Source: Blepharisma stoltei ATCC 30299
Taxonomy: Eukaryota; Protista; Ciliophora
DNA: 64,000 bases
Direction: 5' to 3'
Assembly (NCBI GenBank): GCA_965603825.1
Contig: CBFDEM010000002.1
Location: 620,001 to 684,000, forward strand
Part shown: one piece after another, positions 5,246-56,184 of the stretch
How positions within the stretch are numbered: the first letter of the stretch is position 1
Layout: every line of letters begins with the position of its first letter
Made by a program: the position numbers and the translations under genes
Notes under the pieces: model-generated
The model's input: only the letters and a program-made list of their open reading frames with translations
What the model was told of the DNA's origin: nothing
Database searches by the model: none

Positions 5246-7078
5246 ACTTAGCAAATTATAGCATCGCTAGGGCTACTCCTGCCAGGCGAGGGCCTAACTC
5301 ACTACTTAGTATTTGGAAGAGTTGTGCCACCATGCCGCGCTTCATCAAAGGTGGATCATCATAGAAAATTCAAAATGGTTGTTCAGAGAATTGTGCAAAC
5401 TGCGGCATCTATAATATTTATTAAAAATGTAGTTGTGGTGTATGGGCATTATGCAATAATCTATGTTCTCTAGATATAGACCTCATACCTATAACGCTTT
5501 AAAAATACTGGAATAGCATGCAATTTTCTTAGCACTCCTTCTTGTAGTAAATAAAATTCGTTTTTACGTTATAAATTTAGCTCCTCAATACCATTTTTGT
5601 TTTAACTTCAAGATAAAAATCATCAAGTGAGATAATCCTGTACATTGGGACAATATGATGCAGGTCGAGTGTGCAGGTGTTATGTAGATTCGTGAAAGCA
5701 AGCTGAGGAGATATTTTTTGTATATTAATTAAATCTGGTTAATTCTATCTTAAAAAGCTCGAAAGTAAATGAGATAGCATGAAATCAACATTCTAAGGAA
5801 CAGCATTGACTGCACTTGGCACCTCATGCTGAAGCAGCACATGAAAACCATTTAATGTAGGTCAATTTTTACCAAAATCAAAGATTAATTTTGTTCCAAT
5901 TAAAAGGGGCAGTTAAGAAAATTTTAAATACAATGGCTTCTAGCCGATATATGCTGGTTTAAGCACTATTTCAGGAATAAACATATATTGAAACAATTTT
6001 ATCAACATACAATCTCTTTCCTTCTAGCTAAAGTGATACCTGGACCAGCTTTATTCACAATTTGTATTTATCAAGCAAGAAAGAAATATTAGTCACACAA
6101 TTATAAATGCTGCAGCTGCATCAAGCACTGAACTTATTGATTTAATAAAATTTTCTGACCCTGAAACATTTCATGCAACATAGAAAATAGCCTATTTTAG
6201 TTAATCAGTTAAATATTTCTTACATCAACTGCAACCACAACTGTGCATATACAATGAATTTGCAAATCTTTTCAGGCTCTGCAAATCCATATTCAATAAG
6301 TTCAAGATGAAAGCTGTTTTATGAAAATTAATATTGATTTTTTAATAAAAATTTAAGAGTTTCAAAATTAATTTCTTATTAAATTTTTCCAATATATAAG
6401 AAGCTCTTTCAGCTAAACTTGCAATCGTTCTGATGCATGATGAATTAAGCTCTGTAGCCCTTTATTCATAACCTATTAATAACATAAAATTCAAATGATA
6501 ATAAGCAGCATAAACCTCAGGCATAATCTGTTTTATCATTTTCAATTCCAAAATTCTAATGAAAGTGGAGAAATTGCTAAATGTTAAGATTATTAAAAGC
6601 TTTTATTTTACCTAAAAAGTCCTTACAAACATAAAACATTTTGGTCATAATTATTTATGCCATTATTTTTCGATTCTAAATAAATTCTGAGTCAAGTTAA
6701 AGGCATAGCAAAATCAACACTTGGTCTAGTATAGCAAAAGATGTTATAAACTTATAAATAGATTGATTTAAATTATTTAGGCTAAAATGTACGTAAAATG
6801 GAATGTGACTTTCAACACATCTTTTCTTGTGGTAGTTATCCATGCATATGCGAGCATAGCTTTTGGAGTCTGAAATTAGCCTAGCAATATTTGGTGTCCT
6901 ACAACGAAGGACTTAATCACAAACCTGCTGGATTGTGGCCTGGTCAAATTATCGAAATCTTTATTGTATATTTTAAATGCAATTCTTTCACTGTCAAATA
7001 AATTCCTGCTATAAATAAAATCATGATAAAATAAAGTATGCAAAAAATTTATTTCATCATTCGAGATAATCAATTAAT

Positions 7079-10000
7079 ATGAAAAATTTAATTGCTCTCC
7101 TTCTGCTGATCCACTATTCTGCGGGATATACAAGCTTTTCCTCTCTAAGTATTACTGCAGATAATAAAGATATTAATGCCCAGACTACATATTCAATAAG
7201 TGTGCAGTTAGGATCATTTGGAGAAGATGTGCCTTCTGATTTTACACTTGTAATGGTTTTACCAAATAAATTAAGTGTAATTGATTCAGTTGGAACTAAT
7301 CCAAGTACCTGCATTCTACAAGATTCAAACGGAGCATCTGACTATTCACTAACATCTGCATATGATTCAGCAAATCCTCAGTCAGGCCAATGTGGAGTTT
7401 CAGGCACTAATACTTATACCCTAATTACGCCTAATGTAAGATCCAGAGGCCTTAATTTTCAAATTGGAAAAATCCAAAATCCTAATGCTTCTTATAGCTC
7501 AACTAATATAGGCTCCATTCAGTTTTATGGATACAAATCCGGGAGTACAAACCCAGATTATCAAGGCAGTCAACCATTGAGTGATTATTATTTTACTGTA
7601 GGCACCTTGACTAGCATATCATTAACTCAAGGAAGCGTGGCTATTGGGGCGTGAAATACTTACACTTTTTCATTTTACTTAGAAAATAACATTCCTTCAG
7701 GTGCAATTGTGATTTTTACTTTTAATAGTAATTTTTCTTTGAGCACTGCTTCAAATACAGCTGTTACAGGTCAGATAAATGGTGGATCGAGCATAAATTT
7801 AAATTGTGACATAACTGGACAAGTTTTAACAGTTTATAATCTTTTTAGCTCAAATCTTGTAGTTACATCTGGATCAACCTATCTTACTATCAGCATTGTA
7901 CAAGTAAGAAATCTCAGATATATCGGCTCAGCAGATATCAGTGTTGCAACAGCTGTATCAAGCACAGAATATATCGATAAAATGACAATTAATGCATCAT
8001 CAAGTACTTCATGCGAAATAGAAGTTAGCTCATTCACTTCATCAGCTAAATATGTCCTTACATCAACAACTCTTACAATTGCATTTAAGCAAGGAAATTA
8101 TGCAGCCAGTGCTTCAAGTGCTGCAAATGCATATTCAATAAGATTAGTAATTCCTACTACCTTTACTCTTTCATCGACATTCAGCTGCACAAAATACATA
8201 GGCATAGATCCTAGCTATAGCACTATAAGCTGCACAAATCAAGGTGGAGGAATTGTTACAACAAATTTAATAAGTCAAAATTCTAACATTGTTGCAATAA
8301 ATTTGCTCAATGTCATACTTCCTCCCAATTCGAAAACAACAGATTATATACAGATCTCAACTTACACAGAAGAAAACACAAGTGGATCAAAAATGTGCGA
8401 AAATACTCAGTTCGCTACATACAGTGCAACTCCTAATGCAATTACTGTAAGTTCAAAAACTAGAAGGAGCTCTTATGTTGGTGATCTTGGCCCTTATACG
8501 CTTACATTTAAAACTACAACTCAAATGCCCCAAAATTCGTATATAAAACTTGTTCTGCCTATGGCACAGGTTGTGGAAAATTCAGGAATTGTATGCTATG
8601 AAATTTTATCAGGAACTATCCAAACCTCAAATGTATGCACAAAATCAAGTACCCCATCTGACTCTACAACGTATGAACTGTACATTCCAGAATGATGCTC
8701 AACTACATCTACTGGCTGCACAGGTTGCTGTAGTGGAGGTACAGAATTATCTGTTAGCATAGACGGAGTAGTTAACCCATACTACGTCAATTCAAATACA
8801 GGAACATCGGTAAAAATTTATACCTTAAATCCAACACAGGATGGAATTATAGATGATGTCACATCAGGATTGGAATTTACACCATCTTTAGTAGCAAAAT
8901 CAATTTCTTCCACAAGTATGACAAGAGATGCCAACATTGTTGGCCAAGATATTAAAATCGATATTTCTCATACATCTACTGTGATTTATATTCAAAACTC
9001 TCAGGTGGTTTACTCTTTTCCAGCGTCATTCATCTATTCAGCTAGTAGTAACGTGAAGTGCACCAATCTTGGGACAAATACGGATACAACTTGCTCTTTT
9101 ACAACTAATTCATCAGATGGCTCTATTTCTACGGTTACAGTAAGTAACTTGTGTACGAGTAACTGCGCTTCTGGCCAAACTTATAAAATCAGGATATATA
9201 ACATTCAAAACGCTATTACTGTTGCGCAATTAACAAATCCTTCTTATACTGTCTCCGCATATTATAGCTCATATTTAATAGAGAGTGGGGCAATTGACTC
9301 GTCTGCTTTAGTTAGCCTTGACACTGGGACGATTACTTCAATAAAAGCATATAGATCAACTAATAGCATCAAATCAAGCATCACCATGTGGATTTCTTTT
9401 ATACATCCTACAATGATGAAAAGCACAGGGGTCATTACTATCTCCTTTCCTTCTTTGATGGTTTATCTTAAGACTTCACTTTCTGTGTTCCGGTACTCTG
9501 ATAATACTCAATTAACAATTAGTACTTCAAATGATGGAGCAAATAGTATTACTGGACTGACGATTACTAATTATTGCGCTTCAACATGCGCTGGGGGTGG
9601 AAATATTACGATTGCAATGACTGGAATTAAGAACCTTGATTATCTTCAAACGATTACTGGCTCTTTAACGATTACTACATCAGATAGTAATTCTAATAGT
9701 GATACTGGTACCGTTTCTGATATAACAACAATATTAGCTCCTTTGGAGACTGGAGCAATAACTGAGATTGATTTGCACCCAACCAATCCTACTATTTCTG
9801 AGACTACAGACTATAGGATCATTTTTACAACTTTTAATGATATCCCAGCTGGAGCGACTATAAAAACCGAATTTCCAAGCGGAGTCTCCCTCTCTTCTAC
9901 AAGTACTACTACCTGCACAAGCTTTATCAATATATATTCTGGTCTTAGCTGTGCTGTTTCAGGTAGTGCACTGACTTTGTCCAACGGATTCCCATCAGGT

Positions 10001-12976
10001 GTAACTGGCCAAATCCAGGTTGGATTTGTAGCATCCAATATCGCTAATGGAGCCTCAACTGCATCAAGCTATGGACCCTTCAAAATTTCAACAGTAGACA
10101 CAACCGGATATTTAATTGATGCTGGCTCAACAACTTTTACTTATTTATCTTATAAAGCCTCGAGTGATTGCTCTACTGACTGTAAAACATGCGCTGGAAC
10201 TTCTGGTACGCAATGCTATTCATGCAAAAATCCTTCTTCTAAGCCAATTTTGCTTGGCTACTCCTGTGTTGCAACTTGCCCAGATGGGTACTACTTGACT
10301 TCTTCCACACCTCTTACATGCCTGAGCTGCTACTATACATGCAAAACCTGTCTTGGGCCTCAATCTAGTGATTGCACATCATGTGAATCAGGCTATTACA
10401 AGTCTGGCGGCTCTTGTGTTACTCCATGTCCATCTGGATCTACTCTTAATTCCAATAATATTTGTGTAAATGATAATGCATGCACTTCTCCCTGCGCTTC
10501 TTGTAGTGGAAGCTCAACTTTTTGTTTAAGTTGTGATCCGAATTCCTCTACACCAGTACTCGATCCAGAAAGAGGGGAATGTGTAACAGAAGAAACTCCA
10601 ACAGAGGATTATTGCCCTACAGGATATTATGAAGACAGTAATAAAATCTGCCAGAAATGCTCAACTAATTGCGCAGAATGCTACTCAAGTTCAACTCATT
10701 GTACAAGCTGTCCATCAATTTACACATATAAATACTTGAATAAGCTTGACAATACTTGTGTTTCTTCCTGTCCAGCTTTAATATCTGTTCAAGACGATAC
10801 AAATCTTGTATGTAATCCATGCGATAGTTCTTGCGCTACTTGCAATGGCGTTAATGCCAATAATTGCTTAAGCTGCTATTCAACTAATAAAAAATATTTG
10901 ACTGCTGATAATCAATGTGTAGCAACTTGCCCTGCGAACTATTATAATTTTCATAATACTACCTCGGGCTCGTATAAGTGTATAGCCAGTTGTCCAACAT
11001 CATCAGGTTATTATATAGATTCAACGAACACTTACTGCAATGAATGCATGACAACTTGCTCAACTTGCTCCAATGGGTCTACATGCACTTCATGCAGCAC
11101 CTCAACTCCTTACTTGAACGATCAGTCTATATGTGAAGCTGACTGCACGTCCTCAGAATACAAATACACCGAAAATGGCAACAAAAAGTGCTACTCAGTC
11201 TGCCCTTCAGGAACTTCTCACTATACAGACAGCTCTAGTAAGAAATGATGCCTTTCCACCTGTCCCAATGGTTATTATGCTTCTACTTCTGGGACAGCAA
11301 CATCTGGTCAAAGCAATTCTTTTTGTACTGCATGTGATACCACCTGTGCAACCTGCAGCGGAGGAGGGAAAAACAGCTGTCTCACCTGTTCCTCTTCCTC
11401 TACTTATCCTTATAAAAATGAAAATAATGAATGTGTTGAAGCCTGCTCATCAAGTGAATATACAAATACGTTAAACGGTAAGATGGAATGTGTAACTTCA
11501 TGCCCAAGTGGCTCATACCAACTGACTGACAAATCAGGCAAAAAATGGTGCTCTAGTTCTTGTGGTGATGGATATTATGTTCAAAAAGTGTCAAGCACTG
11601 TCAATAACTGTAACCCATGCGACACAACATGCCAGACATGCAGTGGAGGATCAACTACTAATTGTTTGACCTGCACTCAGCAGTATCCTTATTTAAATGA
11701 GAAAAACCAATGTGAATCAAGCTGCTCCAGCAATGAATATACTTATGCACTGAATGGTAAAACAAGGTGCTACTATACATGCCCATCAGATACTTATCAA
11801 TGGATTGATACATCAGGTAAAAAATGGTGCACTGATACATGCCCTAACGGCTATTATATTCAAAAAGTATCAGATAGTGTAACAAATTGTAATGCATGCT
11901 ATACAACATGCCAGACTTGTGATGGGGGTAAAGATAGTGATTGTTTGACGTGCTCTCAATCTTATCCATATATTAATGAAGATAATCAATGCGAAAAAAA
12001 TTGCTCATCTATTGAATATACTTATGAATTAAATGATTTATTAAAGTGCTATACCATTTGTCCTGCTGGGACATATAATACAAATAGCAGCTCAGGCATA
12101 GCATCATGCACGACTTCATGTGAAAAGGGATCTTATGTGGATACTGTAAGTACTTCAGACTCTACTAAAAGCGGTGACTATTGTGAGCCTTGCCCTCAAG
12201 ATTGTTTACTGTGCTCAAGTAAGGTTGAATGCGAGGACTGCAAAGATAAGCATTCTTTGCCAAATACAGTGAATACTACTATTAGCATCTGCTATGGATG
12301 GAGTCCACCAGGACCTGCAACCCATCTTGGTGGGTATGTAATTTATGCACTCATATTTGAAACTATTTTAATTGCTATCCTTATTTTTATATCCAAATTT
12401 AAAAATACAGGGTATTTTGATGCAACTGCCACAGTTTTATTTATGTCAAGCATTATTGAGTTCACTGAAAAATTGATGCTATTAATTTTCTTATGGGTCG
12501 AATATGGACCACATGCAGATATTTTTGTAGCAATAACAGGGTCGATGCTAGTTGGATCTCTACTGATTTCAATGATGTACCAGAATCTGCACTTTGACTC
12601 TTTAGTAGAAAGCAGTGAAACTCTAGAAGTATTTTCTAGCAAAAATAAGTGGGCTTTCAGAATAGTCAGATGTTTTTCTTTTATTTTCGGGATTCATTTT
12701 CTGAGAATCTTTTATAGTGGATTTATGGGATTTGCAATAGCAACAAATGCGAAAACACTTGGAAACGTTAATGCATTTAGATTCCCACTGGAAAAATTAT
12801 GTGTTTTGAATTTAGCGCTTGTCTGTATTCCTATGCTGCTGGAGCAAGCTGCTATTATGGCATTATTTGATGTTGAAACAAATCCATGGCAGATATCTTT
12901 ATTTGGTGTAGTGCTAAATATATGCATTGAAGGACTGTTTTTGTGGGATTACTTTAGAGGCCCATGGAGATTTTAA
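7079..12976 (+). CDS. 1965-aa surface protein: signal peptide, Ser/Thr-rich beta repeats, furin-like CxxC repeats, about 6 C-terminal hydrophobic segments
   Basis: Four supplied ORFs share one frame, separated only by TGA at 7652, 8693 and 11246; gaps checked stop-free; TGA11246 aligns with TGG in internal repeats KKWC. Confidence 0.9.
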
Positions 12977-48376: not shown

Positions 48377-49786
48377 ATGCTCAAAAGAAAACGCGGGAAA
48401 ACTACATCTCCTTTATCACCAAATAAAAGTACAATATCTATAAGAAATATACCCAAAAAAACAAAGCTCAATAATCATCACAAAGGAGAGAACGGTTATG
48501 AACAAACAACGCTAAGCCAGACATTCTTAAAGAAACCACCAGCTCAATCCCCAAAACTTAATAAACAAATTCAGCCAAAAATAGATGAGCAAAATTTCCC
48601 GCCACAAACTCTACAAACTTATCGTTTATATCCCGAAATTGAAGGTATAATTCGGTCATATCTCAAGGTATATATAAAAAAACTTAAAGATAAAAATTTT
48701 TTTGCCCTTGAAGAACCTCAAAAATCGATAATTATCGAAGGGCCAAGTGGCTGTGGGAAAACATTTCTAATAAAAAGCTTATGTGAAGAATTAGGCTTAA
48801 GGATTCTTGAACTTGGAGTATCTCATAATCGAAATAGTGCGCAAACAATAAAAATTTTATCTGAAGCTACACAAACCTATGCCTTGACCTCAGGGGAAGT
48901 AAAAAATATCCAGGGAAGTATCATTCTACTTGATGACGTCGACATAGTTTTAGAGCCTGATAAAGGCTTCCACAAAAGTGTTTCAGACTTATTAGGGTCA
49001 AATCGGAATCCAATAATAATGACCTGCCAATGCTCACCCAAAATTTTCAGATCCCATGATAACGTCAAAGTTTGCCGCATAGAAAGATCTCCAGAAAAAG
49101 TTTTTGGGTTTATAAAATGAAAGCGAGACGAATTAAAGTTAAAATTAAGCGACGAAGAATTAGAAGTTTTATGCACCCACACAAAAGCGAATTTGCATGC
49201 ACTGCTAAATGCTATGAAGTTGATTGTAAGTTTTAGATAGAGACCTCTAGATTTAATTGGCTGAGACAATGCAAGACTTATCCCTCCTAACTCTGTGGAG
49301 ATTGTAAAAGAATCAAAGGCTAATATGCTGGAAAGCGAAATGCTGAATTTCATAGAAAATAACTCGACCAGTATATACCTAGGAATTGATGAATATGTGA
49401 ATTGGCTTGAAGGACTTGAAGAAATCGACATTTTGAACTTATTTAGCAAGAATATTCAAGAAAAAGAGAACCCAATCTTAAATGAATGCTCGATTTATAG
49501 TGGCACGATGGCCTATATGCAATATTTAAGCGACTATTTTATGAGGAATCAAGAAAGCACTTGCAGATGTAAGCTTCAAGAAATTGATGAAGAAAAATCT
49601 AATTTGACTATTGTTAGGGAACATTTGGCACATATGGGAGACCCAACTGATTATATTGGGTATTTTCAGGAAATCTCGAAAATGTCTTGTGATGTGGAGC
49701 CTTCTTATTATCTACGGACTAAGCCAAAGCTGGCAAATCTGATGTCGATATTCTTGCAGAGAAACCCGAACTTGTTTAGGACTTAA
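48377..49786 (+). CDS. RFC large-subunit-like AAA+ ATPase (ELG1/ATAD5 or CTF18 group)
   Basis: Walker A GPSGCGKT, ILELGVSHNR, Walker B ILLDDVD, PIIMTC; TGA=Trp at 49118 and 49262; intron 49226-49240. Confidence 0.78.
49226..49240 (+). other. 15-nt intron gtaagttttagatag
   Basis: Removes in-frame TAG and links to ORF 49295-49786. Confidence 0.85.
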
Positions 49787-49901: not shown

Positions 49902-52637
49902 ATGTCGCAAAAAAGTTTACGAATAAAGCTGACTTGAAAGATTATTGTTCCTTTGATGATAGGTATGATTCTTATTTGCAGCGTCGCAATAGTCCCATTG
50001 TATAACGAATATCCTATTTGAATAGACAACTATATTAATGATATACATGATGATCAAGGAAAAGCAATGATAGATGTATCGCTATATCTCGTTAAAAGTG
50101 AGTCACTTAATATCATCCAGCACTCAGCAAACCTTATGATAATTGCCAGGGCTTTAATGAATTCTTACTTCGGAAATTCATTAGCAATAAAAACTCAAAA
50201 TTATTCACCTGGGCTAAACTACGTAAGCGGAATAGCAATAGCTGAAAATAAAGCTAAGCTATCATGCTGAAATAACATAACAAATACAAGTTACTGTCAG
50301 GCTCTTTGATTTACTTCTCCAAGCGATGATAATACTGCTAACCTAAATAAAACTTCTCTTCTAAATCTGAATTCATCAGCTGTCTTTGATAGTTTCTTAA
50401 GACCTATGGCTGTGATTGGCTATAAGCTGAATCCATTATTTGGAGACGTGTTTATAGGCTTTGAAAATGATGGTCTTTACTATTTAAATCCAGCAGGAAA
50501 TTACAGTTTTCTAGCTAATGCATCTAAAAACTCCTTATGCAGTAGCCCAACCTATCAATATGACCCAAGATGCACACTGTGGTTTGAGGAAACAAAAAGC
50601 AAGTCTTTTGAAACCAGAAACAGCGTGGTTTTAACAGACCTCAATTTAGATATAAACTCTTTAAGCCAATCAGCTTGTGTAGGAATTTGGAGTGACTCTG
50701 ACGATTTTATATTGTCAAGCTGCCTAAAGTTTTATCTAAATTCATTCAGAAAACGCTTATGGGGAGTAAATGTAGGAAAAGGGTCTTATATATATGTGCT
50801 GGATGCTAGTGGAGAGGTTATTGTGTATTCTAAATCAACGTGGACTTCAGCAAATCCTCCATCAATTTTTGAGCTTGAGTTTGGGAAAAATGCAGATTCT
50901 ATCTCTGCTGAAGTAAGATATTACAGAGACCATATTTTACCAATTTTTCAAAAAAATAAGACAGAATTGGCATATTATTATAAAAATGGCGATAAAATGC
51001 TGATTTCGGTTGCCCCTATAAAGATACAGCTTGGCCTAAATTCTGAGCTGACTCCTTGGGCATCTGTAGGAATTGTAATAAAAGAATCGGATACGACTAA
51101 AAAACTAGACAAGTTAAAAGATGATTTTTATTATCTAATGTATGGTGAAATTGCCATATTTGCTGTTCTTATAGTCTTTTTTGGAATTTGATGTTATTTT
51201 TTAACAAAATTCCTTTCAGCTGCAGTTACAAAACCTGTAGAAAAATTATCATGCATTTTAAAACGATTATTTAAGAAAGATCTAGGAGTTGATATCATGG
51301 AAGAATATGAGCCGGGTCCTCCAGAAATTGGCTCTTTATATGAAATCTTTGAGAAACTCCGAATTGTTCTTAAAATGCAGGATTCTATAAAATTCAACGA
51401 CGAAACAGCTGGCATGATTAATTACGCTCAAGCTCTAAATTTATTCAGAGACTTCAGGAATAAAAAAGCTATGGAACTTTGCCATAGAGAACTCGGAAAC
51501 ATTCATTTTCAGAATAAAAGATACCCAGAAGCAGCATTAAATTATTATAGCTCATATAGACTCTCCAAAAACATAGAAGGCATTTCAGAGCTGGAAAAAG
51601 CCAGAATTAAAATCCAAACAGCAAAATCTATGCTATTTGCAGGAACCAAAAAAGAAGAAGCGATTGAAATGTTTAATGAAGCTATTGATTTCTATAAATC
51701 TCAGTCATATAAAAATATAGAGATTATTCTCTGTTTGCTGGATAAAATAGAAAGCCTTTTTGCAGTCAGCCAAATCCCAGTCTCAGATATAGATGAAGTG
51801 GAAAAGCTACTACAGGAATGAATTCCATTAAGCATGCAAAGCATTCTTCAGCAAAAATATTTATATTTTAGAGCTTTTCAATATGAAATGCAAGAAGATT
51901 TAAAAACTGCTTCAAGGCTGTATATGATATGCATAGAAGGATTTATTGATTTCGACCCTAATATAAGGAAAAAAACTCTTGAAAGATTAATTGGGATTTT
52001 TGAAAAAAATAGTCTGCCTTGCTATGAATTAAAGATTTTATGGAAAAATTTGAATGAAATTAGCAAAGATATCGCCCTAATTATTGATACAAAAATTTGC
52101 AACTTAGAGGTCCAGAACAATATATTGTGGCTTATTGAAGCTGTTTTTAATAAAAATGATAGGCTATCTATAATTGATTTTGATGAAGCCATACAGATTC
52201 ACTTTAATTTAACCCAAAAAATCCCTAAAAATATTCGTTTCTCTATTATTGATTTAATCAACCAATCTGGAAAATCTGTGCTTTATGATGGAATTAATGC
52301 TGGGATTAACCAAATTTGTGCTTTGGATATCAAAAATTCAGCACTTTTGCCAAGCCCGAATATCCAGCAGAAATGGGTCATAGCGATTTGTGGAAGTGGA
52401 GATAAAGGAAGCGAAATTAGACAAGATTTTCTGTCTAAAAAGGTTAATGAGCTGGGGATAAATTTGGTGATTGTTTATATCAATTATGATCCTAATCAAG
52501 CTAATGAGTTAGGATTATTAATAAACTCAAGTCCACGAGGTGTGGTAATTTCAGTCTATTCAGACGATGATATCAGATCAGCAGTTCAAAAAACTGCAGC
52601 ATTTATGTGCCCATCAAAATGTGTATTTAACAATTAA
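49902..52637 (+). CDS. TM-dCache-TM-HAMP-TPR-vWA receptor, paralog 1 (911 aa)
   Basis: One frame from ATG49902 with TGA=Trp at 49935, 50019, 50268, 50307, 51189, 51819; YDPRCTLWF, YIYVLDASGEVIVY, KPVEKL..EIGSLYEIF, TPRs, vWA-like C-terminus. Confidence 0.85.
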
Positions 52638-52756
52638 TTTTTATAAATTTCATTAAGATAGGGTATAAATTTGTATAAATATAACGTGAATCTATTTCTC
52701 ACCAAATTATAATCCATTTTTGCAACTTTCCTTACAAAAATTATTCAACATACTAA

Positions 52757-55498
52757 ATGTCAAATACAGGATTGACAAGAAAGCTGACCTGAGGTATTCT
52801 TGTGCCTTTAGTTGCAGGGATGGTTCTGATTACCATAATTGCGTCAGTTCCTTTATACATTCAATACCCAACATGAATTGATAATTATATCAATCACATG
52901 ATCAACGATCAAGGAAATGCTATGCTCAATGTAAGTAGCTTCGTTGGCAAAACTGGGTCATCGAATGTTGTACAATATGCAGCCAATTTAATGATTATTG
53001 CTAATATACTCATGGAAGAATATTTAGTTCAAGATATTCTATCGGTAAAAAATGATTTCAATTATGAGGACAATTATGTAAGTGGAGTAGGCTTTGATGA
53101 AGGCAATATGACTGTGCCAGGCTTAATTGAAAAAACAAATATGAGCTACTATGCAGCCATGTGGTATCTTAACCCTGATATCAAAAATTCTTCACTTTTG
53201 CCTCCTGAATCATATAGGAATTTAAAGTCTTCAGCTGTGTTTGACAGCTTTTTAAGGCCAATGGCACAGCTTGGGGATGAAGCAAGCCCTTATTTTGGAG
53301 ATGTGTATATAGGTTACGATATAGATGGCTTTTTTTATACAAATCCTACATACTATAGAGGCTATTTTTTAAACTATTCAGAGATGAATTGCAGCTATAA
53401 CCAAGGAAGTCCAGCCCAATTTGACCCTAGATGCCGTCCTTGGTACGCTCAAACCAAAACCTCTACATCTCCTAACAACCCCAGTATTGTATTAACTGAA
53501 CCTTATCAATCAATCAGCAATTTCAATTTAGGGCAATCAGCATGCACAGGGCTATGATACGGTAACCAAACTTATATTCTTACTGCCTGCATCGATTATT
53601 CCCTAACTTCTGCTGAAAATCATTTACTAAATGTAAGTGTCGGCGGCTCTACATATTCCTATGCATTAGCAGCTGATGGAAGAGTCATAATCCACCCAAA
53701 ACTAAACAGGACCTCAAACGTCGTCCCACCTATAACCCAGCTGGAATTTGGTAATAACCCAGACCAAGACGAAGTTAACTATTATAATGAGCACATTTTG
53801 CCTTATTTTAAACAAGTCAGGACTATAAAAACTTATTACTACAAAAATGGGGAAAAAATGATGATTGCTATATCCCCAATTTTAATTAAGCAGGATATTG
53901 AAGAGCACCAAACCCACTGAGCGTCAATAGGAATTGTAATGAACCAAAAAGAGATGACAAAAGATGTAGAAGGGCTCAAAGAAGACTGTAATATATTGCT
54001 ATATGTGGAGTATGGAATTTTTGGAAGCATTGAGCTGATTATTGCTGTTCTATGCTACTATTTAACAAAAAATATCGCCAGGACCATTGTGGCGCCTATA
54101 GATAAATTATCAGAAATTTTAGATAAACTTATTAAGCATGACTTGGGATTAGATATAATGGAACAATATGAGCCAGGCCCTCCAGAAATAAACGCGCTAT
54201 ATGAGGTGTTTGATAAGCTTAGAGTTGTGCTTAAACTTCATGATCCAAGCCAGTTTAAGCACGAAACAAATGCTATGATGAATTACGCCCAAGCCCTCAA
54301 TCTTTTTAGTAAATTCAGAAATAAAAAAGCAATGGAACTTTGCTATAGAGAGCTTGGGAATATTCATTTTAGGTCTGAGCGGTATCAAGACGCTGCTTTA
54401 AGCTATTATAACTCTTATAGAATAGCTAAACAGATTGAAGGGTTTCCAGAGCAGGAAATGGTAAAAAGGAAAACCCAAACTGCCAAAGCAATGATGATAG
54501 CAGGCGTCAGAAAAGAAGAAGCCATGGAGATGTTCCACGAAGCCATTGATTTTTACCAAAATTCGTCAAAAGATTCAGTTGACGTCATTTTATGCCTGCT
54601 AGAAAAAATTGAAGGGCTTTTTGCTATTGGAGAAAACACAGAATTCGTACTTGATGAAACTGAAAAGCTCCTTAAGGCAAGGTTTTCTGTAAGCTACCAA
54701 GATATTTTGCAGCAGAGATACTTGTTTTTTAGAGCCCTGCAGTATGAGACACAAGAAGACTACCAAACTGCAAGCAGGCTTTATGTGCTGTGTTTAGAAA
54801 ATTTTATGGAATTTGACCCAATGATAAGAAAAAAATCAATAGAAAGGCTGATTGAGATTTTTGAGATGAAAAATCTGCCAGTAGCTGACCTTGTAGTGCT
54901 CAAAGAAGAAATGGAAAATAAAAGCAAAGACATTGCGTTGATTGTTGATACGAAATTTGATGGGAAAGAGTTCCATCATCTTATATTATGGCTAATAAGC
55001 AGTGTTGTGGATACTAAAGATAGGCTTTCAATTATAAATTTTGACGATGAATTCCATATATTGTTTAACTTAACAAAAAAACCTGCAAAACAAATTGAGT
55101 TTCCGACCTTGGATTTAATGAACCAAGGAGGAAAATCAGTTCTATATGACGGAATCAATGCAGGGATTGAACAACTCTATTCTTTCCGATCAGAAAACAC
55201 TACATTTTTAGGACAAGAAGATATTCGTCACAAATGGATAATTGCTATTTGTAATAGTGATGATATTGGCAGCCAAATTTCTTTTGCTGAGATTTCTAAA
55301 AAGATTAGAGACTCTGGGGCTCGCTTAATAATTTTTTATATAAATTCTGACCCATCCCCACACTCTCAGCTTGAATCTTTGAAGAACTACAGCATAAGAG
55401 GAATATTTCTATCAGCTTATTCCCAAACTGAGATAAGACGTGCATTCCAAAGGATTGCTGCTATAATCTGTCCATTCAAACTATTTTTGGTTAATTAA
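52757..55498 (+). CDS. TM-dCache-TM-HAMP-TPR-vWA receptor, paralog 2 (913 aa)
   Basis: One frame from ATG52757 with TGA=Trp at 52790, 52874, 53555, 53918; FDPRCRPWY..TEPY..CID, YALAADGRVIIHP, APIDKL..EINALYEVF, TPRs, DIALIVD/DRLSIINFD/LYDGI/KWIIAI. Confidence 0.87.
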
Positions 55499-55527: not shown

Positions 55528-56184
55528 ATGGTGAGTACTGAAGGCGAAGTTAATTTTTCCTTCAAATTAGTTATCCTTGGCGATTCAGGAGTAGGTAAGA
55601 CCAATCTTCTACAGCGCTTCACCAAAAATATATTTTCCTTAGCCACAAGAAGTTCAATGGGTTTCAATAATGACTACAAAACTCTAGACATCGAAGGTAA
55701 AACAGTTAGGGCCGAAATATGGGACACGCCTGGACAAGACCGATATAGGGCTATGCTAAACCCATTCTACCGTGGAGCAGTTGGCGCGCTTCTCGTTTAC
55801 GATCTCACCAATGCTGAAACCTTCACCAACCTTCAAAAGTGGATGAAGGAAATCAAAAACTACGGGGAGTCCATAGAAACTGTTCTTCTAATTGGCAATA
55901 AAAGTGATAAAGAAGAGGAAAGGAATGTAAAACAATCTGATGCGATGGCTTTTGCACAGAAAAACGGGATCGCGTATATTGAAACTTCAGCGCTGAATGC
56001 AAATAATGTGGACAAAGCGTTTGAGATCATTTTAACTAATTTGGTTAAAAATAAGACAAGCAATATACCAGCCCCTGCACCGCCGAAACTTGATGTAGAA
56101 GGGAAATCGAAGAAGATTGGGAATGAAGAACATAGACAATTCGATGACACTGTAAGGAAGACCTGTAGTTGTAGCTTACTATAA
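55528..56184 (+). CDS. Divergent Rab11-like small GTPase
   Basis: GDSGVGKT, WDTPGQ, YRGAVGALLVYD, GNKSD, ETSA; C-terminus CSCSLL. Confidence 0.85.
   Translation: MVSTEGEVNFSFKLVILGDSGVGKTNLLQRFTKNIFSLATRSSMGFNNDYKTLDIEGKTVRAEIWDTPGQDRYRAMLNPFYRGAVGALLVYDLTNAETFTNLQKWMKEIKNYGESIETVLLIGNKSDKEEERNVKQSDAMAFAQKNGIAYIETSALNANNVDKAFEIILTNLVKNKTSNIPAPAPPKLDVEGKSKKIGNEEHRQFDDTVRKTCSCSLL

What the first reader, a model, noticed from the sequence alone, without database searches (positions are those of the whole stretch)
49902..55498. Tandem chemoreceptor-style receptors (dCache-HAMP) wired to a cytosolic TPR-vWA output
Seen: once TGA is read as Trp, six supplied ORF fragments collapse into two collinear ~910-aa paralogs. 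Each has an N-terminal TM, a ~370-aa ectodomain with Cache hallmarks (F/YDPRC.xW, Y.Y.L...G.VI.HP), a second TM, a HAMP-like linker (P..KL...EI..L...F..L), TPR helices and a C-terminal vWA-like domain. Established: TM-dCache-TM-HAMP is the input module of bacterial chemoreceptors and histidine kinases; in animal alpha2delta/CACHD1 the vWA domain is extracellular, inside the Cache region. Inference: here there is no kinase, cyclase or MCP output. The signal would pass through HAMP to a protein-interaction TPR-vWA module, an apparently uncharacterised eukaryotic small-molecule sensing system.
Basis: partly seen in the sequence, partly recalled or inferred. Interest (0 to 1): 0.88.

Follow-up and report, generated by a model that had tools for sequence, protein, structure and literature searches.

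The report
Archaeal-type two-part membrane sensor in ciliate
Two neighbouring ciliate genes encode membrane sensors with a bacterial-style chemical-sensing outer part and a non-enzymatic protein-binding inner part; the same sensor, with a short partner subunit, occurs in Asgard archaea, diverse protists and giant viruses, so it may be a signalling system eukaryotes inherited from their archaeal ancestor.

Summary
Observation confirmed. In Blepharisma stoltei (TGA=Trp), 49902-52637 and 52757-55498 are two intronless paralogs of 911 and 913 aa, 49% identical, built TM-dCache-TM-HAMP-TPR-vWA (profiles, AlphaFold pLDDT 87, Foldseek). There is no kinase, cyclase or MCP domain. The family is not ciliate-specific. 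It occurs in jakobids, Trimastix, a chytrid, a chrysophyte, other ciliates and giant-virus MAGs. It is in at least 121 of 400 Asgard genomes and 3 of 251 genomes of another archaeal phylum, and was not found in about 1,040 other prokaryote genomes sampled. In archaea a sensor-HAMP-only partner gene follows directly (55 of 59 loci); the two always match in having or lacking Cache. Partners also exist in ciliates, next to viral copies, and fused in chrysophyte-type proteins. In a rooted tree both eukaryotic subunits group with Heimdallarchaeia. Best reading: a heterodimeric receptor inherited from Asgard archaea, signalling through TPR-vWA protein binding. Dimer, ligand and effector are inferred, not shown. 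The window copies are derived: both have lost the vWA metal site, and A has lost the amino-acid motif. No paper found. The scan noted two paralogs earlier, without the Asgard or partner link.

The parts
49902..52637 (+). Gene A, 911 aa receptor subunit (TM-dCache-TM-HAMP-TPR-vWA); TGA=Trp at codons 12, 40, 123, 136, 430, 640
49941..50009 (+). A TM1 (about aa 14-36); basic residues before it, N-terminus inside
50019..51116 (+). A extracytoplasmic dCache domain (aa 40-405), no vWA insertion; amino-acid motif degenerate (Y220, T225, W227, N248, K276); 8 N-glycan sequons
51129..51203 (+). A TM2 (about aa 410-434)
51219..51383 (+). A HAMP domain (about aa 440-494): helix, connector, helix
51384..52052 (+). 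A TPR solenoid (about aa 495-717), LGN/Pins/KLC/Rap-like
52056..52610 (+). A C-terminal vWA domain (about aa 719-903); MIDAS and the family's C-terminal Glu tail lost
52757..55498 (+). Gene B, 913 aa paralog with the same architecture; TGA=Trp at codons 12, 40, 267, 388
52874..53977 (+). B dCache domain (aa 40-407); near-complete amino-acid motif F222, R227, W229, Y250, D280; 9 sequons
53990..54244 (+). B TM2 and HAMP (about aa 412-496)
54245..54913 (+). B TPR solenoid (about aa 497-719)
54917..55471 (+). B vWA domain (about aa 721-905), MIDAS degenerate

Best explanation
A and B are receptor (R) subunits of an undescribed two-subunit membrane sensor. R is TM-dCache-TM-HAMP-TPR-vWA. Its partner (P) is TM-dCache-TM-HAMP with only a short tail. 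Shown: the architecture, the distribution, the R-P gene linkage and the R/P phylogeny. Inferred: R and P form a heterodimer, so the four-helix HAMP bundle is completed while only one bulky TPR-vWA unit hangs below it. A small ligand (an amino acid or similar) binds the distal Cache pocket and moves TM2 and HAMP. The last HAMP helix runs straight into the first TPR helix, so the movement can rearrange the compact TPR-vWA unit and switch its binding to a protein partner, through the TPR groove or, ancestrally, the metal-dependent MIDAS. The pair arose in archaea, passed to eukaryotes from a Heimdallarchaeia-related lineage, was present at or near LECA, and was patchily lost. The window copies are a heterotrich-ciliate tandem duplication that has lost the MIDAS; their partners would be among six unlinked P genes in the genome.
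For: Domains. Distribution: Stentor, Tetrahymena, Mallomonas, Stygiella, Andalucia, Trimastix, Nowakowskiella (the chytrid gene spans 3082 nt for 911 aa, implying introns); Asgard 121/400; the best structural neighbour is an all-archaeal, mostly Thorarchaeota, cluster. Pairing: P lies directly downstream in 55 of 59 archaeal loci, and the other four are at or within 600 nt of a contig end; 39 pairs both have Cache, 11 both lack it, none mismatch. P lies next to R in 2 of 3 giant-virus MAGs and in other virus-like contigs. P-R fusion proteins exist. Tree: P clade 100/99; eukaryote R 96/86 inside a 100/99 clade with six Heimdallarchaeia-type R; eukaryote P 93/90 beside the matching Heimdall P (92/93). 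AU tests reject an Asgard-only R clade (p=0.007) and an all-eukaryote clade (p=6e-6). The Asgard cytosolic model has pTM 0.76 with one helix spanning HAMP and TPR1.
Against: There is no experiment, and no dimer model could be run. R and P are unlinked in Blepharisma, so pairing there is extrapolated. The 11 Cache-less pairs are probably only one or two events. The eukaryote branches are long and compositionally biased, the AU groups were chosen after seeing a tree, and eukaryote P support is below the starred level. Three genomes of a non-Asgard archaeal phylum carry the pair, and viruses carry it, so lateral transfer happens. A lacks R126, Y144 and D173 equivalents. No effector is identified, and the conserved Glu tail is disordered in the monomer model.
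Confidence: 0.65

Rival explanations
1. The same receptor, but spread among eukaryotes by lateral transfer (archaea to one protist lineage or to giant viruses, then onward) rather than inherited vertically from the Asgard ancestor.
For: Patchy eukaryotic distribution. Giant-virus MAGs carry R and P. The chytrid sequence groups with virus-like rows. A non-Asgard archaeal clade has the pair.
Against: Eukaryote R forms one clade spanning Discoba, Metamonada, Alveolata and Stramenopiles. R and P each fall next to the same Heimdallarchaeia group, which by my recall is the group closest to eukaryotes. Ciliate copies are deeply diverged and expanded.
Confidence: 0.2
2. The window proteins no longer signal on ligand. 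They are structural, chaperone-like or decoy membrane subunits that anchor or traffic another membrane complex, much as alpha2delta does for calcium channels.
For: Both have lost the MIDAS and the Glu tail. A has lost R126, Y144 and D173 equivalents; Gumerov 2022 (PMC8915833) shows that D173 substitution abolishes binding in PctA.
Against: B and the C50 and C57 paralogs keep the pocket motif, and C57 keeps a near-intact MIDAS. HAMP residues P445, E475 and F483 are at least 90% conserved. Allelic variation is mostly synonymous.
Confidence: 0.2
3. R works as a homodimer or as an A/B heterodimer like ordinary Cache-HAMP receptors, and P is only a co-regulated modulator or dominant-negative decoy.
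For: HAMP receptors are normally homodimers (established knowledge). A and B are adjacent, and P genes are unlinked in ciliates.
Against: Near-universal operon linkage, matched loss of the ectodomain, co-occurrence in viruses, and P-R fusions that place both units in one chain.
Confidence: 0.15
4. Artefact: separate short ORFs or pseudogenes, joined only by assuming TGA readthrough.
For: Single pieces score below Pfam cut-offs.
Against: TGA/TGG interchange between the paralogs, full-length relatives encoded without in-frame stops (Stentor entries; a heterotrich-like contig whose gene translates to its query), an identical database protein, and contigs that cross the TGAs.
Confidence: 0.01

Closest known systems
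Prokaryotic TM-dCache_1-TM-HAMP receptors (MCPs PctA/PctB/Mlp24/Mlp37/McpB; histidine kinases, GGDEF, SpoIIE and adenylate cyclase receptors)
   Same: Input module, topology and pocket motif. They are the top Foldseek and PDB-profile hits.
   Different: No MCPsignal, kinase, cyclase or phosphatase output. A TPR-vWA unit sits there instead, with a dedicated truncated partner subunit.
alpha2delta-1 and CACHD1 (eukaryotic dCache_1 with vWA)
   Same: dCache with a similar Y..R.RxWY motif plus a vWA domain in one chain; profile hits at 1e-24 to 1e-29.
   Different: There the vWA is extracellular and inserted inside Cache, with two nested dCache domains and no HAMP or TPR. Here Cache is uninterrupted and the vWA follows TM2-HAMP-TPR. 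This is an exception to the statement in PMC8915833 that all eukaryotic dCache_1 proteins carry the vWA insertion.
LGN/GPSM2/Pins, kinesin light chain and Rap-phosphatase TPR domains
   Same: Closest natural TPR solenoids by profile and structure; peptide-binding grooves.
   Different: They are soluble proteins. TPR similarity is generic and shows neither orthology nor a shared ligand.
ITIH1/ITIH4, Sulfolobus ArnB, Rpn10 and integrin alpha-I vWA domains
   Same: Fold (Z 21-25). Most family members have an intact DxSxS..T..D MIDAS.
   Different: Different context; the window copies lack the MIDAS.
Sln1-type fungal kinases and the Naegleria Cache adenylate cyclase (PMC4822843)
   Same: Eukaryotic membrane receptors with a Cache domain.
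   Different: Enzymatic outputs. That paper attributes eukaryotic Cache domains to horizontal transfer.

Membership tests
dCache_1 sensor domain | Long stalk helix plus two PAS-like modules between two TM helices | tested here: met
   AF2 model and Foldseek hits to Mlp24, PctA/B and TlpA; family profile hits at about 1e-24. A and B alone are below the Pfam cut-off.
dCache_1AA (amino-acid sensors) | Y121, R126, W128, Y144, D173 motif, in gene B | tested here: inconclusive
   B has F, R, W, Y, D: four of five, with Tyr to Phe and longer spacing. Binding is untested.
dCache_1AA (amino-acid sensors) | Same motif, in gene A | tested here: not met
   A has Y, T, W, N, K.
HAMP-linked receptors | AS1-connector-AS2 directly after TM2, with conserved Pro and Glu | tested here: met
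   Pfam HAMP in 23 of 55 members, best 3.9e-13; P445, E475, F483 nearly invariant; helix-loop-helix in the model.
HAMP-linked receptors | Dimeric four-helix bundle | not testable with these tools
   Only single chains can be folded; no coordinates are returned.
Methyl-accepting chemotaxis proteins | MCPsignal hairpin domain | tested here: not met
   No Pfam hit; the cytosolic part folds as TPR plus vWA.
Sensor histidine kinases and cyclases | HisKA/HATPase_c, GGDEF or guanylate_cyc domain | tested here: not met
   None in A or B, and none among the 25 commonest families of 55 members. The UniRef name 'histidine kinase' for Tetrahymena Q22MS6 is not supported by its domain scan.
alpha2delta/CACHD1 | vWA inserted in an extracellular dCache; two nested dCache domains | tested here: not met
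   The vWA is C-terminal, after TM2, HAMP and TPR; one dCache.
MIDAS-type vWA | DxSxS, Thr, Asp | tested here: not met
   Degenerate in A and B; intact in the Asgard members and most other eukaryote members.
Eukaryotic signature proteins of Asgard archaea | Present in Asgard and across eukaryote supergroups, with eukaryotes branching within or beside Asgard | tested here: met
Eukaryotic signature proteins of Asgard archaea | Absent or rare in other prokaryotes | tested here: inconclusive
   0/301, 0/201, 0/301, 0/201 full-length and 0/40 in five sampled phyla, but 3/251 in another archaeal phylum. Most bacterial phyla were covered only by a two-pattern scan.

The most novel reading that the evidence does not exclude
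An obligate heterodimeric Cache-HAMP receptor with a purely protein-interaction (TPR-vWA/MIDAS) output. It evolved in archaea, passed vertically from a Heimdallarchaeia-like ancestor to LECA, survives in ciliates and other protists as a chemoreceptor class, and has been captured as a pair by giant viruses. It may also bear on how Cache and vWA came together in alpha2delta/CACHD1; that last point was not tested.
Probability: 0.45. Interest if true: 0.93.

Novelty: new variant of a known kind. Interest (0 to 1): 0.86.

Why it matters
By my own knowledge, known Asgard eukaryotic signature proteins are mostly cytoskeletal, trafficking and ubiquitin components, so a transmembrane environmental receptor shared with LECA-wide eukaryotes would add signalling to that list. 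It gives an exception to two published generalisations: that eukaryotic dCache always carries a vWA insertion (PMC8915833), and that eukaryotic Cache domains come from horizontal transfer (PMC4822843). It offers a candidate receptor family, with defined ligand pockets, for ciliate chemosensation; Stentor and Tetrahymena have members that can be knocked down. It also suggests a new way to use HAMP: an asymmetric heterodimer that drives a binding switch rather than an enzyme.

Tried and rejected
Other genetic codes: the standard code fragments the genes, and TAA/TAG=Gln gives overlapping long frames on both strands; rejected. Introns in A and B: none seen. A and B as the R/P pair: rejected, since both score as R and are sisters in the trees. 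C-terminal Glu tail docking in cis: not supported, pLDDT below 50. 'Asgard-only among prokaryotes': rejected after L051, L060 and several high-GC contigs proved to be archaea of another phylum. It is probably Thermoplasmatota, inferred from phylum size and genome sizes only; their TPR-vWA nests among Asgard rows. The locus labelled Bathyarchaeia is in the Asgard phylum of the genome collection. Two long bacterial outgroup rows fell inside eukaryote R in the first tree and were dropped along with other long or redundant rows. A word-based homolog search with the family alignment returned mostly TPR noise. Single-protein viral scans found nothing; an alignment did. Feature-based atlas search gave no usable hit. 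Ten literature searches found no description; the preprint 10.1101/2024.07.03.601958 and its four held supplements have no Cache or HAMP mention; the Gumerov supplements are not held, so listing there is unchecked.
Full report
Observation. The genome has 41.46 Mb in 64 contigs. A paralogous gene that I translated with TGA=Trp is identical to a database protein labelled Blepharisma stoltei, which identifies the organism. With that code, window 49902-52637 and 52757-55498 are open frames of 911 and 913 aa, 49% identical and collinear. Three TGA codons face TGG in the other paralog, and three fall on Trp-rich family columns. Gene A equals database protein P0002, and P0169 is the 913-aa match of B. 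Contigs of four runs from one study cross the TGA sites without gaps or joints; that they are RNA is only the tool's guess. The 40 listed allelic differences are 27 synonymous and 13 missense.

Architecture. Each protein has two hydrophobic segments. Basic residues lie before TM1 and after TM2, and 8-9 glycosylation sequons lie between them against 3-5 in the longer C-terminal part. This fits N-in, Cache-out, C-in. Single pieces score weakly. An alignment of 55 full-length relatives gives dCache_1 in 35, HAMP in 23, TPR_12 in 44 and VWA in 43. The family profile hits CACHD1, alpha2delta-1, Mlp24/37 and PctA over positions 142-388, and LGN, Pins and kinesin light chain over about 465-690. The AlphaFold model of A (pLDDT 87) shows a long stalk helix, two PAS-like modules, TM2 running into HAMP, about eleven TPR helices and a Rossmann-like domain. 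Foldseek matches it to chemoreceptor dCache domains and integrin I domains. No kinase, cyclase or MCP domain is present.

Distribution. A search of 1.84 billion representatives with the TM2-to-vWA piece of B found dozens of 860-1010 aa proteins with the same order. Named ones come from Stentor, Tetrahymena, Mallomonas, Stygiella, Andalucia, Trimastix and the chytrid Nowakowskiella, and from a Hodarchaeales archaeon. A scan of GTDB species genomes returned 58 archaeal loci, labelled Heimdall-, Hod-, Kari-, Thor-, Promethe-, Hermod- and Sigynarchaeota or unnamed, one of them on a 3.2-Mb chromosome record. The bacterial hits matched only the TPR or the Cache-HAMP part. Whole-genome searches found the family in at least 121 of 400 Asgard genomes. 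It was not found in 301 genomes of a deltaproteobacterial-type phylum, 201 Bacteroidota, 301 Thermoproteota, 201 Halobacteriota (Cache-HAMP part only) or 40 of the Methanocaldococcus phylum. One exception is real: 3 of 251 genomes of another archaeal phylum carry it. These are samples, so they do not show absence. Independently, the nearest atlas structure is an all-archaeal, mostly Thorarchaeota, Cache/TPR/VWA cluster. Three giant-virus MAGs also encode it.

The partner. In 55 of 59 archaeal loci a second gene follows on the same strand, mostly within about 15 bases. It encodes TM-dCache-TM-HAMP and usually ends just after the second HAMP helix. Where the receptor lacks Cache (574-aa and multi-TM forms), the partner lacks it too: 39 pairs with, 11 without, none mixed, although the 11 are probably few events. 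Blepharisma has six unlinked 507-520 aa genes of this kind, and Stentor has several. In two of three giant-virus MAGs and in several virus-like or intron-bearing contigs, a partner lies beside the receptor, head-to-head or in tandem. These neighbours, and five of the six Blepharisma genes, score higher with an Asgard partner profile than with a receptor profile; A and B do the reverse. Mallomonas-type 1500-1650 aa proteins fuse a partner-like unit to a receptor.

History. An unrooted tree of HAMP-TPR-vWA separates archaeal from eukaryotic rows. A tree of the shared TM-Cache-TM-HAMP part has 60 rows, uses LG+C20 PMSF and is rooted on four-domain-type receptors from Halobacteriota genomes; I removed long and redundant rows first. 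It gives a partner clade (100/99) holding Asgard, ciliate and virus-like partners and the first fusion unit. Eukaryote receptors (96/86) sit inside a 100/99 clade with six Heimdallarchaeia-type receptors. Eukaryote partners (93/90) sit beside the matching Heimdall partners (92/93). AU tests reject an Asgard-only receptor clade (p=0.007) and a duplication inside eukaryotes (p=6e-6). Caveats: long branches, compositional bias, and groups named after seeing a tree. So the R/P split predates eukaryotes and both subunits came from the same archaeal lineage. Vertical descent is the simplest reading; transfer, possibly helped by viruses, is not excluded.

Mechanism, inferred. HAMP works as a dimeric four-helix bundle (established knowledge), and a partner that stops after HAMP is what is needed to complete that bundle under a single TPR-vWA unit. 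In the model of the Hodarchaeales cytosolic part (pLDDT 90, pTM 0.76), one helix runs from HAMP into TPR1 across an RFGN motif whose Arg, Gly and Asn are at least 90% conserved, which is a plausible mechanical link. The TPR resembles peptide-binding solenoids, and the vWA is closest to ITIH and ArnB. Most members keep a MIDAS and a Glu-containing C-terminal tail. The tail is disordered in the monomer, so any role would be in trans or conditional. The amino-acid motif of PMC8915833 is common in eukaryote receptors and partners and variable in Asgard. The window copies belong to a heterotrich subclade that lost MIDAS and tail together. B keeps four of five pocket residues and A two, so A may be a diverged or ligand-blind copy. 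The effector is unknown; I put the binding-switch output at about 0.5 and the heterodimer at about 0.75.

Comparison and novelty. It works like a bacterial Cache-HAMP receptor but is not an MCP, kinase or cyclase. It is not an alpha2delta/CACHD1 member either, since the vWA is neither extracellular nor inserted. PMC8915833 states that all eukaryotic dCache_1 proteins have the insertion, and PMC4822843 attributes eukaryotic Cache to horizontal transfer; this family is an exception to the first and a challenge to the second. Databases name members only by single domains. Ten literature searches found no description, though the library lacks most subscription papers. Two earlier first-reader notes on paralogs in this genome repeat the architecture only. 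I rate it a new variant of a known kind, at the novel end, interest 0.86.

Left out. The C4 paralog becomes a 902-aa frame if two 15-nt introns are removed. I only measured that length in a script and did not search with the joined model.

Noticed in passing
G000:C2:695054-695503 (L015:6054-6503), about 20 kb beyond gene B: A vWA-only fragment 75% identical to the C-terminus of B; looks like a truncated duplicate.
   Followed up: partly
G000 C12:578.5-581.1k, C53:1118.7-1121.3k, C33:622.8-625.4k, C50:47.2-49.8k, C32:347-350k (L016-L019, L106): A second, strongly diverged receptor subfamily (about 870 aa or more) with long TPR insertions, an eroded Cache motif and a barely recognisable vWA.
   Followed up: partly
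L103, L104, L105, L108 (Blepharisma partner genes): Heterotrich partners carry a conserved tail of about 60 aa, rich in Trp and Pro, after a degenerate HAMP; a similar P.NP[FY] element follows HAMP in viral partners and fusion units. Possible TPR ligand.
   Followed up: no
L021, L061-L072: Promethearchaeota-type variants without Cache: a 574-aa two-TM receptor or a multi-TM receptor (P0037), each with a 134-191 aa TM-TM-HAMP partner. Possibly intramembrane sensing.
   Followed up: partly
L020, L021, L023, L038, L049 partner genes: Some Asgard partners end in Cys-rich zinc-ribbon or HEAT-like tails instead of stopping after HAMP.
   Followed up: no
L120, L121, L123, L125-L133: Giant-virus MAGs and virus-like contigs (tRNA synthetases, IF-2, dynamin, D123, PEX11 nearby) encode the receptor, often with its partner; the role is unknown.
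   Followed up: partly
L051, L060, L145-L151, L159, L210: A high-GC, non-Asgard archaeal clade has the receptor-partner operon, in some loci beside a pyruvoyl arginine decarboxylase gene.
   Followed up: partly
window 48377-49786 (+) and 55528-56184 (+): The flanking genes are a Rad17/RFC-like AAA ATPase (probably with a short intron near 49.2 kb) and a Rab-type small GTPase that starts 30 nt after B; no evidence of a functional link.
   Followed up: no
window 7070-12973 (+): A 1968-aa frame under TGA=Trp with furin-like / growth-factor-receptor Cys-rich repeats, a large surface-protein candidate.
   Followed up: no
G000:C4:695127-697863 (L014): A receptor paralog interrupted by two candidate 15-nt GT-AG introns.
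   Followed up: partly
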